Made by a program: the position numbers and the translations under genes
Source: Octopus sinensis
Lineage: Eukaryota
NCBI RefSeq assembly: GCF_006345805.1
Contig: NC_043021.1
Location: 3,906,001-3,970,000, forward strand
Direction of reading: 5' to 3'
Length of the DNA: 64,000 nt
Part shown: in pieces, positions 21,953 to 58,097 of the stretch
Position numbering within the stretch: position 1 is the stretch's first letter
How the letters are laid out: each line of letters begins with the position of its first letter
The notes under the pieces: model-generated
Told to the model about the DNA's origin: nothing
The model's input: only the letters and a program-made list of their open reading frames with translations
Database searches by the model: none

Positions 21953-22249
21953 CAACAATTGAGGGCAAAATTAATTAATTATTAATCAATTTCACCAAGT
22001 GTTCAGTATGCAAAGGGACCATTCAAGGCGAATTCAAATTATTACATTATATAAAAGGGCTTAGTAAAATAAATTACTTTGCCGCATACTGAACTCATTA
22101 GAATAGCAGCTAAAAAACTTTTTTAAAGCTATTTCTAATACTTAAAGAAAATTTTCTTTAAGTATTAGAATAGCTTTAAAAAAGTTTTTTAGCTGCTATT
22201 TCTAATGAGTTCAGTATGCGGCAAAGTAATTTATTTTACTAAGCCCTTT

Positions 22250-22281
<32 letters not shown>

Positions 22282-33653: not shown

Positions 33654-34340
33654 TGTGTGTGTGTGTGTGTAGTGGTGATGGTGTAGTGGTAGTTAGATGG
33701 TGGGGGGTGGTGGACAGACATTGCTGGTAGTCCTCTCCCTTTTATATCTTATGTTCTTGGAACGGTGAATCTTGAAGGAGATAAAGCTATAACTAATAGC
33801 ATGTAAATACTGAATAAAAAAAAACCTTGGATTAAAAAAGTTGAAGGATGCCCATTTTATAAGCCAATATTTACATAGTATTATTTATAGCTTTATCGGA
33901 TTCAAGATTCACTGTTCCAAAGCATCAACAATATACACACATACACACAACTAATTGTGTGGTAAGAAACCTACTTCCCAACCACATGGTTCAGGGTTCA
34001 GTCCCACTGTGTGTCACCTGGGCGAAATGTCTTCTATTATAGCCTCAGGCTGACCAAAGCCTTCTGAGCAGAGTTGGTAGATGGAAACTGAAAGAAGCCT
34101 GTTGTATACGTATGTGTGTGAGTGCGTGTGATGTTTAACATCCACTTTTACATGCTTGCATGAGTTGGATAGAATTTATTGAGACAGGAGTGGCTGTGTG
34201 GCAAGTAGCTTGTTTACCAACCACATGGTTCCGGGTTCAGTCCCACAGCGTGGCACCTTGGGCAAGTGTCTTCTATAGCCTCGGGCCGACCAAAGCCTTG
34301 TGAGTGGATTTGGTAGACGGAAACTGAAAGAAGCCCGTCG

Positions 34341-34372
<32 letters not shown>

Positions 34373-35865
34373 TGTGTGTGTGTGTGCATGCGTATATCTT
34401 TGTGTGTCTGTGTTTGTTCCCCTAGCATTGCTTGACAACCGATGCTGGTGTGTTTATGTCCCCGTTACTTAGCGGTTCGGCAAAAGAGACCGATAGAATA
34501 AGTACTGGGCTTACAAAAGAATAAGTCCCGGGGTCGAGTTGCTCGACTAAAGGCAGTGCTCCAGCATGGCCGCAGTCAAATGACTGAAACAAGTAAAAGA
34601 GAAAAGAGAGAAAGAACTTCTACAGCCTGAAGCCCCTTCTTGTCGCCAACACCCTCACTTGTTTCCAAGCAAATTAATATTCCCCATGACCAGACAGGTT
34701 TTCACAGACGATTGGAAGGGAAAGAGACCATCTCCATGATGACAGCACTCATTTACAGCTATCACATGAAGTCAAGGCAAGGAGACAGTAACACACACAC
34801 ACACACACGATTGGAGGTACATGGCCTAGTGCTCTAGGGGTTTGGATGTTGGATGCAAGGTCAAAGTTAAGATTTGCAGACCAGTTGGCACAAAATGAGT
34901 GTTTGGCACATTTGAGTGTTTTGATGTATGTGTCCCTGTGTTTAATTTAATTCTCTGTCCTATGACAGGTTTCTTTCAGTTTCTGTGTACTAAATTCACT
35001 CACAAGACTTTGGTTGGTTCAGGACCACAGTAGAAGACTTGCTCAAGGTGCCACACTGGGACAGAACCCACAACCATGCAATTGGGAAGCAAATTTTTTA
35101 ACACATAGATACATCTGCACTTTCATTGCCAATCGTCTGTGAAAACCTGTCCGGTCATGGGGAATATTAACTTGCAGTTTTGAAATGGTTTCCTTCATTG
35201 GATACCCTTACAAGCAACAAAGTGTACTGGGTTATATTTTTGGTGTGATGCCATCACTAGAGGAAGTTCATACTCCAACAAGCCTCATTTGATTTTGCAG
35301 TGTCTCAGCTCACTGAAGGTTGTGCGACTTAGATGGGGTGAGTATAAGAGAGAGAGAGAGGGTGGTGGTGAAAAAGAAAGATGGAGTAAGTGGATAGGAG
35401 GAGTGAGGAAATGATGACAATGGGAGGAGGGGAATAGAGTGGTTGGAGTGTGTGTAGGGAAGGGGTAAGACTAACAATGCGGAGGGTGAGTAACAAGAGA
35501 GAGGGAGTATGGGAGAGAGGGGTATGGGAGAGAGAGGGTATGGGAGAGAGAGGAGAGTGAGAGGGGATAGAGAGGAGAAGGAGAGAAAGAGAGGAGTATG
35601 GAAGGGAAGGGTATGGGGGAGAGAGAGAAACAGAAGGAAAGAAAGAGAAAGAGTGGAAGGAAAGAAAAAGAAGAAAGAGAAAGAGAAGCCTGAGAAAGAA
35701 AGAAGGAAGGAGGAGATAGAAAGAGAGAGAGAAAGATGGGAAGGAGAGAAAGAGAGAAATATAGAAAAAGAGAGAGATATAGATAAAGAGAGAGAGAGAG
35801 AAAAGAGGAAAGAAAGAAAGAGAAGGTGAGAGAGAAAGAGAGACATAAAGATAGATAGATAGATC

Positions 35866-35896
<31 letters not shown>

Positions 35897-36391
35897 CAAC
35901 GGCTGCTGTTACATCATCATTATTTAGTATTCAAGAACGGCAGAACCGCTAAACAGAAGCTCCGTCTTTGAATGTATGCATTCAAAGATGGAATGATCTT
36001 TAACGTTTACAAACTCTGACACTGGTGATTATCTTAAACTCTCTTTCGTATATCTATATTTTCAACAGAAGATGATTGATGTGTTAACAATGGCAGTTGT
36101 ATATCATTTCAGGATTAATAATTACCGATACGATGACAAACAAATACAGAAACATGCTACAATGGTTTGAAACTCAATTACTCTTTGCTCTCTTTTACTT
36201 GTTTCGGTCATTTGACTGCGGCCATGCTGGAGCACCGCCTTTAGTCGAGCAAATCGACCCCGGGACTTATTCTTTTGTAAGCCTAGTACTTATTCTATCG
36301 GTCTCTTTTGCCGAACCGCTAAGTAACGGGGACGTAAACACACCAGCATCGGTTGTCAAGCAATGCTAGGAGGACAAACACAGACACACAA

Positions 36392-36424
<33 letters not shown>

Positions 36425-36593
36425 CATATATACAACGGGCTTCTTTCAGTTTCCGTTTACCAAATCCACTCACAGGGCTTTGGTCGGCCCGAGGCTATAG
36501 TAGAAGACACTTGCCCAAGGTGCCATGCAGTGGGACTGAACCCAGAACCATGTGGTTGGTAAACAAGCTACTTACTACACAGCCACTCCTGCG

Positions 36594-39900: not shown

Positions 39901-40129
39901 GTAAAAAATAGTAAAAAGTGAAAAAACTACAGAAGGCTTGTTTTAAAAGGTTAAAAAATATATATTTAAGTCAATATGTCTGAAGAATGTTATAAATTTA
40001 TAACATTCTTCAGACATATTGACTTAAATATATATTTTTTAACCTTTTAAAACAAGCCTTCTGTAGTTTTTTCACTTTTTACTATTTTCTATATATTCAA
40101 CCACATTCTTTCACAAACCAACTTTCTCA

Positions 40130-43100: not shown

Positions 43101-46100
43101 TGATCTAAATTAAAACATTTCATAAAAATTTTCTGTTGATTTATGCTTCAAACACCAGCCGAATAATGACAAAATTATTTCACTAAATTCTTCATTATTT
43201 TAAAATTTAATTAAAACAAAGGTAGGGCATTTCAACAGAAATATTACAAAAGGATTAGGAACTTTTCATATAACTCAGTCAATAAAATATTAGCATTAGT
43301 AGTAGTAGTAATAACAGCAGCAGCAGTTAAGGTAGTAGCAGCAGCTGTAGTAGAAGCAAAAGTATTATTAGTAGTATTATTAGCAGGAATGAGAAGTATT
43401 TTATTAACAATTTATGTTAATTGTTACAAATATATTTAACTGTGAGGGGGGTGCTGAGAAGTTTCTGGCTTTAAGGGTTTTGTGAGAGGTCTGGTTGAAG
43501 GCCCAACCTCCTCATTTCTTTCACAGAGCTTAGGAAACCTGAAGGACTGGCACAATAAGTGTGTGAATCTGAGAGGGGAATATATTGGATAAAATCGTAT
43601 TTAACTGGTTCTCCTGTATTATTTTTTTTACCCAAAGCCAGGAACTTTTCAGCCCCTCCTTGTATTCAACAACTGCTTAAAAAAAAAAACAAATTATAAA
43701 ATTTCCATATCTCTCACAATTATTCAGACATGCATACGTTACATATTTACATACGATACATGGTGCATCGTTATAATTACTAATCAATCTTACCAGCAAG
43801 AGAGATGGTGGACAGTATCATGGAGTTTTTTTGAACAAAGGCATTAACCAAAAAAAAAAAAAAAAAAGATTATGAAACATTTACCTGGAACTTTTTCAAC
43901 AAAATTGGATGGAACAAGACCCTTACTTCCATTAATCAGTTCTCCTTCAAAAAATCCATCCTAGAGGAATAATATAAAGAAAAAGAAAAAAGTTTAGAGC
44001 TACAAAATATAACCAACATGAAACCAAGTGAAAGAAATAAATTACGATGTGGAACATGATTTTGGTCCTCAAATAGCATCTGTTCTTTCCTATTTGCTGA
44101 CCCCAAGAAAGTGTGAAAAATGGCTAGTATTTCCTTCAAACTTTGATTTTGTTTTATTTCTTCAAACCCCAAAGAATCCCTCTCAGCACATGGCAGTGAT
44201 GCTCTCCCACTATTTCTGCTCATCATCAGAATGTCACTAACGGACATGCTCAACTGGTTATGGTCAAGCAACTGATAAACAAATCTGTGGTATTGAGCAG
44301 AATATTTGCTATAATGATATTTCTGCTTTAACAACTCAGCACTGAATCTGTTTGAAATGTAATGGAAAATTGGTCAGTTTGAAAGCGTTGATGTCCAAGT
44401 TGCAAAAGCAAAGTTTGAAGGGGAAAGTAGTCATTTCCTTTGATTTCTAGATAGAAGCAAAGAGAAAACAACATTTTATAACCAAAGATAAAGATTAAAA
44501 AAAAAACAAAAAACACCTAAATTTTGTTACATAGTGTTATTAAAACAGAAGACATTTGATCAAAAAAAAAATGTTAGTCAAAATATTAGGAGTCTTCCTA
44601 AGTCAGAAACCACAATTAGTTTTTAAATATTTACCGTTCAAGGAGAGGGTTGAAATGCCGCCACTGTCATTTGGAAAGGGACCGGCATGAAATGCCAGAA
44701 ATCCCCTTCTCTTCATGGCATGCAATCTTATCTTATTTCACAAATGTCATTTCAGAAGATGCCATTCTCAGATTGTAACCTAGCTACCTAGCTACTTTGT
44801 CATCCTTGCAGTCTTGGCAGAGTTTTTAAACAAGAATTAGCATTGATGTTATCAATTCATGACTATTTATAAAGCTACAACATCGTCTTCCTCTCAATAT
44901 CTCGGTGATCTTGGTGAACAGTTACTGTTAATCACTAGAAAGTGGATTGGAGAAATCAAAATATCAGTGTACCAGATTAAATGCCTTGTGGTGGTATTTA
45001 GCTATTCAAAGTTCAAATCCCTTGATTTCCCTTTTCACTGACTTATGGATATTTTTTTCTTTACTTGTTTCAGTCATTTGACCACAGCCATGCTGGAGCA
45101 CTGCCTTAAAGGGTTTTAGTCGAAGAGATTGACCCCAGGACTCATTCTTTGTAAGCCTAGTACTTATTCTATCAGTCTCTTTTGCCAAACTGCTAGGTTA
45201 CAGGGACAGCAAATTTGTGGAGAGGTATTAAGTCAATTACATTGACCCCAGTACTCAACTGGTATTTAATTCATCAACCTCAAGAAGATGAAAAGCAAAT
45301 TTGACCTAGGTGGAATTTGAACTCCAAATGTAAAGACATGAAATGCTACTAAGCATTTTGTCTGGTGTGCTAACTATTCTGCCAGCTTGCCATATTCTAA
45401 AGAAATCTGTAATAATCCTTTCTACTATAGACACAAGGCCTGATATTTTGGGGGAGGGGACCAGTTGATTACATCAACCCCAGTGCATAACTGGTACTTA
45501 ATTTATCAACCCCAAAAGGATGAATGGCAAAGTCGACCCCGGCGGTTTTGAGTACTTTGGGTACTCAAATCTATTTTTGTAATTTTCAAGATTGTTTTGG
45601 GGTTTCCTGAATGATCCTACAATGTACCTATAATGTACCTAAAACCAAAAACTGCCAACCAATAACCTTGACTAACCCATACCGGCACAGAAAAAGCAGA
45701 CATAAAAATAACGTTGAAGATGTTCTTATATGTGCCATGAGTAAAAAATGGTTTGGAATCACTGCTTTACATTATTCAGTGTGTATTCATTTATTGATTG
45801 CTTCACACACACACAAACATGCGCTATCTTGAAACCTGAATATATTAATATATTTCCTTAATTATCACTACAAATTATGATGGATGGCCAAGTGGACAGA
45901 GTATCAGACACTTTAATCAAAAGCTGACAGTTTGTACTCCACTACTTTGAGTTGCTCTTCGTCTCTGTGCTCTTCACCGCTTCTTCTGTAGTTAAATGTG
46001 GCTCTAACAGACTAGATATATACCACAGGGTGCATAGTAATAGAGATGGTAATTCAGCTTTTAATCTGCCATACACTACTAGCCTGATACATAGAAAGGT

Positions 46101-56253: not shown

Positions 56254-56907
56254 GAGTATTTATTCATAAATGAGGCAGAAGAAATTCAAATACATCAGAG
56301 TATAGTCACAATGGCTGGCATAAATATTTATTAATTAGCGAAATGATAATCAGCGGAAATTAGAGTCTGATTCCTTCACTTGTTCAGGAGAGTTGATGTT
56401 ACGATTGTTTAACCCAAGGTAAGCTGATCAAGTGGACCTAACATTAATGACATTCCAGCCAAGGCCATAATGTCTTTCATTCAGAGAGTGCATCTAGTAT
56501 TATAGTATTTGAGGGATTTAGCTGTTCTTTCGAGCATGCCTGGTCCATTCACACCCTCTCCTCTGAATATCAGTAGCTCTATAGATCCTTTACAACACAA
56601 AGCTGTTCTGCCACACCACCGATAGTCTGTCCCCCACCTCTCAGATTCCATAGTCTTGTGAGCTGCATGGCAACATCACTAATGCTTGTGGCACAAAAAG
56701 GAATAAAAAGAAACCCAGTGCACTGCAAAGTGCTCAGTATTAGGAAAGGCATCTAGGCCAAAGCAGGCAATGGAGCACAATGCAGGCCTTGAACACATCA
56801 CATCCTGTGAAACCCTCCTATCCAAAACCAGCATGGAGCATGGACATTAAATGACAATGATGATGATATTAATAGATGCAGTCATGGGTTTAGACAAGTG
56901 TCTGCTA

Positions 56908-56940
<33 letters not shown>

Positions 56941-57941: not shown

Positions 57942-58059
57942 CATCATCATCATCGAACGGACGTTAAACAATGATGATGATGATGATGATGATGATATAT
58001 ATGTGTGTGCATGTGTGTGTGTATATATATATGTATGTGTGTGTGTGTATGTATGATGG

Positions 58060-58097
<38 letters not shown>

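What the first reader, a model, noticed from the sequence alone, without database searches (positions are those of the whole stretch)
56907..58075. Competing inverted repeats that can loop out the in-frame SH3 exon
Segment X (57844-57954) is the reverse complement of both Y1 (57972-58075; local hairpin around an 18-nt spacer) and Y2 (56907-56988; 38 nt identical, then only microsatellite unit-length differences). The two pairings overlap and are mutually exclusive. X:Y1 leaves exon A free, whereas X:Y2 encloses the 201-nt phase 0-0 exon A in an ~850-nt loop, a geometry known to promote exon skipping or back-splicing. Y2 interrupts a SINE-A head (tctgctat|...|gtcaggctgacc), so it looks like a templated inverted insertion copied from X. 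The result could be a newly arisen RNA-structure switch for an SH3-less RIMBP isoform or a circRNA.
Basis: partly seen in the sequence, partly recalled or inferred. Interest (0 to 1): 0.7.

Follow-up and report, generated by a model that had tools for sequence, protein, structure and literature searches.

The report
Young inverted repeat copy flanking exon
Three related blocks of simple-repeat DNA really do sit in the introns on either side of a RIM-BP exon, and one is a very recent back-to-front copy of another; they could pair in the RNA, but this layout is common here, already well described, and has no evidence yet of changing splicing.

Summary
X (57844-57954), Y1 (57972-58075) and Y2 (56907-56988) are homologous copies of one compound TA/TG/ATG microsatellite block. 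Reverse-complemented X matches Y2 at 82/85 positions, including a 38-nt exact complex core. X matches Y1 at 96/116. The 17-mer core occurs only at these three sites in 64 kb.

Y2 is an insertion into an old SINE copy: at least 12 other copies in the window lack it. It is best explained as a recent templated inverted copy of X, made by template switching or break repair.

The enclosed 201-nt phase 0-0 exon lies on the minus strand. It encodes the N-terminal two thirds of the first SH3 domain of a RIM-binding protein.

On the pre-mRNA the two duplexes are about equally strong (-122.5 and -124.5 kcal/mol) and only partly exclusive.

The proposed "switch" is untested and matches the known model of competing complementary intron sequences in circRNA formation. 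The layout is also unremarkable here:
- Comparable inverted pairs enclose 14-36% of the window.
- About 15 other microsatellite tracts pair with X at -90 to -109 kcal/mol.
- The one related locus found has no cross-exon repeat.

It is most likely a neutral by-product of mutation. Interest is low to moderate.

The parts
56907..56988 (.). Y2: an 82-83-nt compound microsatellite block, an inverted copy of X, inserted in a SINE in the intron downstream (in transcript sense) of exon A
   Evidence: It matches reverse-complemented X at 95% without gaps and 82/85 with one gap, with a 38-nt exact core. No other SINE copy in the window has this insert.
56880..57070 (+). Old, diverged SINE fragment that hosts Y2. 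The inferred sequence before insertion is TCTGCTAT-AGCC-TCAGGCTGACC. Boundaries are approximate.
   Evidence: Compared with other SINE copies. At least 12 copies have 7-10 nt between the anchors where this one has 84.
57491..57691 (-). Exon A: 201 nt, phase 0-0, encoding the linker and the N-terminal two thirds of the first SH3 domain of a RIM-binding protein. The 3' splice site is ttattgcag|ACG. The 5' splice site is a weak GAG|gtttgt.
   Evidence: Translation. Best solved-structure match is the RIMBP2 SH3 domain 1wie, E=4e-10. Exons A and B joined match Pfam SH3_9, E=1.8e-11. Splice-site context. The orthologous exon in L001 is also 201 nt.
57844..57954 (.). X: the shared arm. On the pre-mRNA it is UG/UA-rich and complementary to both Y1' and Y2'.
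   Evidence: It also folds on itself at -46.6 kcal/mol.
57955..57971 (.). 17-nt spacer GAACGGACGTTAAACAA, which forms the loop of the X/Y1 palindrome
   Evidence: Read from the sequence. It occurs once in the window.
57972..58075 (.). Y1: the older arm of the local palindrome, 96/116 identical to reverse-complemented X with several repeat-unit indels
   Evidence: The hairpin RNA has a free energy of -122.2 kcal/mol, z = -10.8 against shuffles.
58076..58131 (.). TA/TG microsatellite tail continuing from Y1. It can pair with Y1 once X is taken by Y2.
   Evidence: Tandem repeat calls. There are 21 pairs between this tail and Y1 in the minimum-energy fold.
43885..43960 (-). Exon B: [25 protein letters not shown], which completes the SH3 domain. 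The intron between exons A and B is about 13.5 kb.
58132..58932 (+). Context only: an internally deleted Mos1/mariner-like element inserted in the (TA)n run next to Y1. Boundaries are approximate.
   Evidence: The ORF 58277-58633 matches Pfam HTH_48, E=1.7e-17. The element ends were read from the sequence.

Best explanation
X, Y1 and Y2 are three homologous copies of one compound (TA)n/(TG)n/(ATG)n microsatellite block.

X and Y1 form an older, imperfect palindrome of about 230 nt in the intron upstream of exon A.

Y2 is a very young 83-nt inverted copy of part of X. It replaced about 4 nt of an old SINE 855 nt away, on the other side of the exon. The most likely cause is one template-switch or templated-insertion repair event of the kind described by the four-point model and MMBIR. 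This step is inferred.

On the minus-strand pre-mRNA the copies can form two duplexes of roughly 80-100 bp and nearly equal stability. This is computed, not observed. X':Y1' is a local hairpin that forms first during transcription. X':Y2' encloses the exon.

This is an ordinary case of complementary intron sequences with competing partners. It may allow some back-splicing or skipping of exon A, helped by the weak 5' splice site. Most likely it is a neutral by-product of palindrome and microsatellite instability, not a regulated switch.
For: Homology and non-chance.

Y2 is derived and inserted
- At least 12 SINE copies lack it.
- The homology stops exactly at the SINE breakpoints.

Y2 comes from X rather than Y1
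- Y2 shares with X the segment CACACATATATACATAT, which Y1 lacks.

Y2 is young
- Only 3 differing columns out of 85: one substitution at a repeat boundary and one TG-unit indel. X and Y1 differ at 20 of 116.
- The host SINE is much more diverged from its family.

Inverted duplication recurs in this window
- A perfect 184-nt palindrome at 39905-40088.
- A palindrome of about 212 nt at 22046-22257.
- A palindrome with 59-nt arms at 5369-5492.

RNA energetics.

The layout is common here
- Inverted pairs of at least 120 bits enclose 13.6% of the window, and pairs of at least 80 bits enclose 36%.
- There are many alternative partners for X'.

No conservation
- The ortholog L001 has no cross-exon inverted repeat and no core motif.

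Known mechanisms: PMC5453318, PMC8794818, PMC8421209 and PMC5052039.
Against: - The donor lies 855 nt away, further than the short-range events usually catalogued. The MMBIR search tool cited only looked within 100 bp.
- Junction microhomology is only 2-3 nt (TAT on the left, G/GT on the right) in low-complexity sequence, so it proves little.
- A third copy elsewhere in the genome could be the true donor. The genome could not be searched.
- Neutrality is argued from youth, lack of conservation and the local baseline, not from RNA data.
- In the equilibrium fold the exon-enclosing X:Y2 pairing wins, and the 5' splice site is weak. A real splicing effect is therefore not excluded.
Confidence: 0.6

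Rival explanations
1. The X:Y1 and X:Y2 pairings act as a working RNA-structure switch. When X' pairs with Y2', exon A is looped out and is either skipped, giving a RIM-BP without a working first SH3 domain, or back-spliced into a 201-nt circRNA.
For: - The geometry and energies fit: 152 nt and 502 nt from the splice sites, and duplexes of -122.5 and -124.5 kcal/mol.
- The equilibrium fold prefers X:Y2.
- The exon is 201 nt and phase 0-0.
- Its 5' splice site GAG|GTTTGT is weaker than GAA|GTAAGT in the ortholog.
- Engineered complementary intron pairs drive circularisation, and competing pairs shift the outcome (PMC5052039).
- In Drosophila, deleting the first SH3 domain of RIM-BP caused no major defect at the neuromuscular junction, so such an isoform could be tolerated (PMC7337501).
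Against: - There are no RNA data.
- The X':Y1' hairpin forms first during transcription.
- The pairings are not exclusive.
- There are many competing microsatellite partners, and the layout is common in this window.
- The ortholog shows no conservation of the arrangement.
- Y2 is so young that selection has had little time to act.
- If the source is an octopus (unverified), circRNAs there are reported at low overall levels (PMC9699675).
- From general knowledge: exons that circularise alone are usually much longer than 201 nt.
Confidence: 0.12
2. Y2, and possibly the palindrome too, is an assembly or sequencing artefact, for example a chimeric or fold-back long read carried into the consensus.
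For: - Y2 is almost identical to its nearby inverted source.
- The window also holds a perfect 184-nt palindrome without a spacer. Such structures can be produced by library artefacts.
Against: - Y2 has clean borders inside a SINE, and it differs from X by a repeat-unit indel and a substitution. That pattern fits real microsatellite mutation after copying, not a chimeric read.
- The window has no N bases or gaps.
- Artefactual fold-backs are usually much longer than 83 nt (general knowledge).
Confidence: 0.1
3. All three blocks are separate copies of a dispersed repeat, such as a foldback element, a small non-autonomous transposon (MITE) or a satellite unit present many times in the genome. 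In that case Y2 was inserted by transposition and was not copied from X.
For: - A mariner-like element lies next to Y1.
- Other long palindromes next to (TA)n tracts occur in the window.
- The genome could not be searched.
Against: - The core occurs only at X, Y1 and Y2 in 64 kb, and is absent from 20 kb of the related genome.
- No target-site duplication or terminal inverted repeats can be seen at the Y2 borders.
- Y2 matches an internal stretch of X, with the X-side homology ending inside microsatellite sequence rather than at an element end.
Confidence: 0.1
4. The repeats affect splicing through proteins, not through RNA-RNA pairing. Intronic CA and UG repeats would be bound by factors like hnRNP L, TDP-43 or CELF, which enhance or silence use of the exon.
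For: - On the pre-mRNA, Y1' and Y2' carry (CA)n runs and X' carries (UG)n runs within 150-500 nt of the splice sites.
- That intronic CA and UG repeats regulate splicing is established (general knowledge, not tested here).
Against: - Nothing was tested here.
- Such repeats are everywhere in this window, so this exon is not singled out.
Confidence: 0.05
5. The match is chance convergence between unrelated compound microsatellites.
For: All arms are built from TA, TG and ATG units. Unrelated tracts in the window reach 71-77% complementarity and up to 76/83 identity.
Against: - A 38-nt exact complex core, and 82/85 identity overall.
- The 17-mer occurs only at the three sites.
- The insertion has sharp borders inside a SINE.
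Confidence: 0.02

Closest known systems
Complementary intron sequences flanking circRNA exons, with competition between alternative pairings (the inverted Alu pair model; Zhang et al. 2014 and 2016, PMC5052039; Ivanov et al. 2015 as cited in PMC9699675)
   Same: Reverse-complementary stretches of more than 80 nt lie in the two introns around an exon with standard splice sites. A second partner in one of the introns can compete with the cross-exon pairing. The distances to the splice sites are a few hundred nt.
   Different: The arms are compound microsatellites, not transposon copies, so they pair in several registers and with many other tracts. The exon is short at 201 nt. No back-splice product is known. 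The cross-exon arm is a very recent insertion.
Template-switch mutations (four-point model, PMC5453318; creation of RNA hairpins, PMC8794818) and MMBIR-type templated inverted insertions (PMC8421209)
   Same: A short target segment (about 4 nt, AGCC) is replaced by the reverse complement of a nearby sequence, creating a new inverted repeat in one step. Short microhomology at the junctions is possible.
   Different: The copied tract (83 nt) and the donor distance (855 nt) are larger than in the usual short-range events. The ancestral state is inferred from related SINE copies, not from a sister genome.
AT-rich palindromic repeats and quasi-palindromes that extrude hairpins or cruciforms and are unstable
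   Same: X, the spacer and Y1 form an AT-rich near-palindrome of about 230 nt with a short spacer. It sits in a region that also has a transposon insertion and a templated copy.
   Different: The arms are only about 83-88% matched and are microsatellite-based. Breakage or instability is inferred, not shown.
First SH3 domain of RIM-binding proteins (PDB 1wie, human RIMBP2)
   Same: The exon A peptide aligns to 1wie at E=4e-10. Exons A and B together match Pfam SH3_9 and SH3_2 above their cut-offs.
   Different: Only two exons of the gene were located. The species is unknown.

Membership tests
Complementary intron pair flanking a circRNA or skipped exon | Reverse-complementary sequences of at least 30-40 nt, one in each flanking intron, on the same transcript | tested here: met
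   X and Y2 are 83 nt long and 95% complementary, and they straddle exon A. Both lie in introns, given the splice sites and exon B.
Complementary intron pair flanking a circRNA or skipped exon | The predicted duplex is stable compared with the alternatives | tested here: inconclusive
   X':Y2' at -124.5 kcal/mol is the best partner of X' in 64 kb and is present in the 1.3-kb minimum-energy fold. However, X':Y1' is equal in energy and forms first, and about 15 other tracts reach -90 to -109 kcal/mol.
Complementary intron pair flanking a circRNA or skipped exon | An observed back-splice or exon-skipping junction | not testable with these tools
   No transcript data are available. Look-ups of the window's own ORFs found no other contigs.
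Complementary intron pair flanking a circRNA or skipped exon | The arrangement stands out from the local background or is conserved | tested here: not met
   Inverted pairs of at least 120 bits enclose 13.6% of the window, and pairs of at least 80 bits enclose 36%. The ortholog L001 has no cross-exon pair.
Template-switch or templated inverted insertion | The inserted tract is the reverse complement of a nearby sequence | tested here: met
   82/85 identity to reverse-complemented X, 855 nt away.
Template-switch or templated inverted insertion | The ancestral sequence lacked the tract | tested here: met
   At least 12 related SINE copies have 7-10 nt where this copy has 84. This is inferred from related copies, not from an orthologous empty site.
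Template-switch or templated inverted insertion | Microhomology at both junctions | tested here: inconclusive
   The left junction shares TAT and the right junction shares G or GT. These are too short, and the sequence too simple, to carry weight.
Template-switch or templated inverted insertion | Absent at the same site in sister lineages or other individuals | not testable with these tools
   The only related locus (L001) is too diverged: the exon is 77% identical and the introns cannot be aligned.
MITE or foldback transposon | Several dispersed copies with shared ends, terminal inverted repeats and a target-site duplication | tested here: not met
   The core is found only at X, Y1 and Y2 in the window and not at all in L001. 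There is no target-site duplication at the Y2 borders. A genome-wide search was not possible.
RIM-binding protein, first SH3 domain | SH3 fold signature, with the first SH3 domain of RIM-BP as the closest relative | tested here: met
   PDB 1wie (RIMBP2), E=4e-10, is the best hit. Exons A and B match SH3_9 at 44.1 bits against a cut-off of 30. Exon A alone matches no Pfam family.

The most novel reading that the evidence does not exclude
One very recent template-switch insertion (Y2) created a cross-exon RNA pairing that competes with an older intron hairpin. It now yields a lineage-specific, or even polymorphic, circRNA or a RIM-BP isoform lacking the first SH3 domain in the nervous system. 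That would be a splicing switch caught at its birth from a single mutation.
Probability: 0.07. Interest if true: 0.6.

Novelty: new member of a known kind. Interest (0 to 1): 0.25.

Why it matters
If Y2 does change the splicing of this RIM-BP exon, it would be a clean natural example of one template-switch mutation creating a competing RNA structure, and with it a new isoform or circRNA of a core synaptic scaffold gene. The ancestral state could be read off the interrupted SINE.

As it stands, the main value is as a well-documented case of a templated inverted insertion in a genome rich in microsatellites and palindromes. It is also a caution: in such genomes, cross-exon complementarity is too common to count as evidence of regulation on its own.

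Tried and rejected
Searches for relatives
- A protein search with the exon peptide gave one hit (P0001, 86% identity). Its contig L001 is too diverged: only the exons align, at about 77% identity, so it cannot show whether relatives carry Y2.
- tblastx between L001 and the window, meant to find the upstream exon, was swamped by microsatellite noise. The upstream exon was not located.
- Exact look-ups of the window's own ORFs across exon A found nothing, so no other individuals or species were available.
That shows the motif is rare in general, but it says nothing about this genome.

Other checks
- Rfam found no family at gathering threshold anywhere in the window.
- Pfam found nothing for exon A alone.

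Ideas rejected
- X and Y2 as the terminal repeats of a transposon. The span would contain a conserved RIM-BP exon.
- The spacer and arms as SINE-derived. The reverse complement of the spacer (TGTTTAACGTCCGTTCG) loosely resembles the SINE stretch GTGTTTACGTCCCCGTTAC read, but the order and strand of the flanking repeats do not fit. I did not pursue this.
- Y2 grown in place from the SINE's CTATAG. A 38-nt exact complex core rules it out.

Not established
- The source species. The sequence looks like a cephalopod mollusc from its repeat content, but that is an impression only.

Full report
**1. What is in the sequence**

The region 56.9-58.1 kb holds three blocks built from (TA)n, (TG)n and (ATG)n runs around a more complex core.
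- The repeat finder reports arms 56906-56988 and 57844-57926 as 83 nt long and 95% complementary without gaps. This is the highest identity among 373 inverted pairs in the 3-kb region. Generic microsatellite pairs there reach 71-77%.
- With gaps, reverse-complemented X matches Y2 at 82/85. The differences are one substitution at a TA/TG boundary and one TG-unit indel.
- Reverse-complemented X matches Y1 at 96/116, with several repeat-unit indels.
- The spacer between X and Y1 is 17 nt (57955-57971) and occurs once in the window.
- Each arm is itself a higher-order repeat with a period of about 30-38 nt, so pairing is possible in more than one register.

**2. Is it more than chance?**

- The 17-mer TATACCATCATACATAC occurs exactly three times in 64 kb, at X, Y1 and Y2. 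Dinucleotide shuffles give 0.01.
- The 38-mer core occurs only at X and Y2.
- Shuffles destroy microsatellite structure, so I used an empirical control. For 150 other compound-microsatellite 83-mers in the window, the best ungapped match elsewhere has a median of 65/83 and a maximum of 76/83, the top values coming from nearly pure (TA)n. Y2:X scores 79/83 and Y2:Y1 scores 73/83.
- The core is absent from 20 kb of a related genome.
- A 22-mer shared by all three arms hits only one unrelated locus, seen in two samples, in the whole JGI metagenome collection.

How often the core occurs across the source genome could not be tested.

**3. The exon and the gene**

- The minus strand of 57491-57691 translates without stops. 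Its flanks are ttattgcag|ACG and GAG|gtttgt.
- The best solved-structure match is 1wie, an SH3 domain of human RIM-binding protein 2, at E=4e-10. Further RIM-BP SH3 domains follow it in the list.
- Exon A alone matches no Pfam family.
- Joined to the next conserved exon, 43885-43960 ([25 protein letters not shown]), it matches SH3_9 (E=1.8e-11) and SH3_2 above their cut-offs.
- Exon A therefore carries the N-terminal two thirds of the domain. Skipping it would disable the first SH3 domain rather than remove it neatly.
- The downstream intron is about 13.5 kb. The upstream exon was not found.
- An ortholog recovered from an ENA assembly (L001, 86% protein identity) has the same 201-nt exon but a consensus GAA|GTAAGT donor site. 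The donor in this window, GAG|GTTTGT, is weaker.

**4. Y2 is an insertion into a SINE**

- The window holds many copies of one SINE family. At least 12 copies have 7-10 nt between the anchors GGCAAGTGTCTTCTAC and GGCCGACCAAAGCC. The copy at 56893 has 84 nt.
- The inferred sequence before insertion is TCTGCTAT-AGCC-TCAGGCTGACC. The sequence now reads TCTGCTAT[83 nt]G-TCAGGCTGACC.
- The homology to X stops exactly at these breakpoints.
- Y2 shares with X the stretch CACACATATATACATAT, which Y1 lacks, so Y2 descends from X-type sequence and not from Y1.
- The host SINE is much more diverged from its family than Y2 is from X, so Y2 is young.
- Replacing a few bases with the reverse complement of a nearby tract is the signature of template-switch mutations (PMC5453318; PMC8794818) and of MMBIR-type templated inverted insertions (PMC8421209).
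- Two caveats apply. The 855-nt donor distance is long for that class. The junction microhomology (TAT; G or GT) is too short, in sequence this simple, to mean much.

**5. Inverted duplication recurs in this window**

The window also contains:
- a perfect 184-nt palindrome of complex sequence at 39905-40088;
- a near-perfect palindrome of about 212 nt at 22046-22257;
- a palindrome with 59-nt arms and a 6-nt loop at 5369-5492, which mixes unique and microsatellite sequence much as X/Y1 does.

This supports a mutational origin for X/Y1 and Y2. It could equally reflect a systematic sequencing artefact, which I cannot exclude.

**6. RNA pairing, computed only**

All results below are for the minus-strand transcript.
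- Duplex energies are -122.5 kcal/mol for Y1':X' and -124.5 kcal/mol for X':Y2'.
- X' alone folds at -46.6 kcal/mol through G-U pairs.
- The isolated Y1'-loop-X' hairpin folds at -122.2 kcal/mol, z = -10.8. Shuffled sequences still average -76 kcal/mol because of the base composition.
- In a 1311-nt fold, the minimum-energy structure (-353.1 kcal/mol) and the ensemble hold about 76-78 X:Y2 pairs and 31-33 X:Y1 pairs together. Y1 also pairs with the neighbouring TA tail.
- Blocking Y2 gives -312.2 kcal/mol, and blocking Y1 gives -328.7 kcal/mol.
- The pairings therefore overlap but are not strictly exclusive, and equilibrium favours the exon-enclosing pairing.
- Kinetics point the other way. 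Y1' and X' are transcribed first, 17 nt apart, and about 0.9 kb of RNA follows before Y2' appears.
- Scanning all 64 kb, Y2 and Y1 are the two best partners of X'. About 15 other tracts still reach -90 to -109 kcal/mol.

**7. Baseline for the geometry**

- Among inverted pairs spaced 150-3000 nt apart, X:Y2 (142 bits, 96.5% identity) ranks about ninth in score and first in identity. The stronger pairs are inverted SINE copies and long microsatellite tracts.
- Pairs of at least 120 bits enclose 13.6% of window positions, pairs of at least 80 bits enclose 36%, and pairs of at least 60 bits enclose 44%.
- An exon sitting inside such a loop is therefore not unusual in this sequence.
- The ortholog L001 has inverted repeats only within single introns, none across the exon.

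**8. Comparison with what is known**

- Complementary sequences in flanking introns promote back-splicing, and competition among alternative pairings shifts the outcome. Engineered constructs confirm this (PMC5052039).
- In octopus, circRNAs were reported at low overall levels, consistent with repression by ADAR (PMC9699675). This bears on the finding only if the source is a cephalopod, which I could not verify.
- In Drosophila, deleting the first SH3 domain of RIM-BP gave no major phenotype at the neuromuscular junction (PMC7337501). An isoform lacking it might therefore be tolerated, and might equally matter little.
- A literature search linking microsatellite-based complementarity to circRNA formation found nothing specific.

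**9. Verdict**

The repeats are real and are not a chance match. The "templated inverted insertion" reading of Y2 is well supported.

The functional reading is plausible in form but untested. It is weakened by the order of transcription, the many competing partners, the high local baseline and the lack of conservation.

I classify the finding as a new member of a known kind. It is most likely a neutral by-product of mutation that may cause some low-level back-splicing or exon skipping. Interest: 0.25.

Noticed in passing
window 39905-40088: A perfect 184-nt palindrome (two 92-nt arms, no spacer) of complex, non-microsatellite sequence, directly after a (TG)n(TA)n tract. If transcribed it would form a perfect 92-bp hairpin. 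It could be a foldback element, a product of template switching, or a sequencing artefact.
   Followed up: partly
window 22046-22257: A near-perfect palindrome of about 212 nt of complex sequence. The outer 58 nt of each arm match exactly (22046-22103 and 22200-22257). A (TA)n tract follows it.
   Followed up: partly
window 5369-5492: A palindrome with 59-nt arms, a 6-nt loop and one mismatch. It mixes unique sequence (GCAAGTATATG..., TTATAAATAGCTG) with microsatellite runs, so it is of the same kind as X/Y1.
   Followed up: partly
window 5545-5710 and 5725-5890: A perfect 166-nt direct duplication, with the copies 180 nt apart start to start, that includes microsatellite runs. This looks like a very recent tandem duplication.
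   Followed up: no
window ~58132-58932: An internally deleted Mos1/mariner-like element (ORF 58277-58633, Pfam HTH_48, E=1.7e-17) inserted in the (TA)n run right next to Y1. Its ends are degenerate inverted repeats flanked by TA.
   Followed up: partly
window 34185-34602 and 36189-36591, plus about 12 other sites: A dense cluster of one SINE family in both orientations. It includes an inverted pair 91% identical over 421 nt and 1.6 kb apart, which is a much longer potential double-stranded RNA than X:Y2. Tandem head-to-tail SINE copies joined by (TA)n and (GAT)n runs lie at 36.4-37.3 kb.
   Followed up: partly
window 56842-56867 versus 57959-57984: GGACATTAAATGACAATGATGATGAT, 40 nt upstream of Y2, resembles the spacer plus the start of Y1, GGACGTTAAACAATGATGATGATGAT (21/26 identical). 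It may be chance, or the remains of a larger shared block. Unexplained.
   Followed up: no
window 57485-57490 versus L001 10190-10195: The donor splice site of exon A is GTTTGT here and the consensus GTAAGT in the only ortholog found. The exon may therefore be defined more weakly in this species.
   Followed up: partly
window 3513-5130: More than 1.5 kb of trinucleotide-type low-complexity repeats, which produce long artificial ORFs in all six frames. Any ORF call there is meaningless.
   Followed up: no
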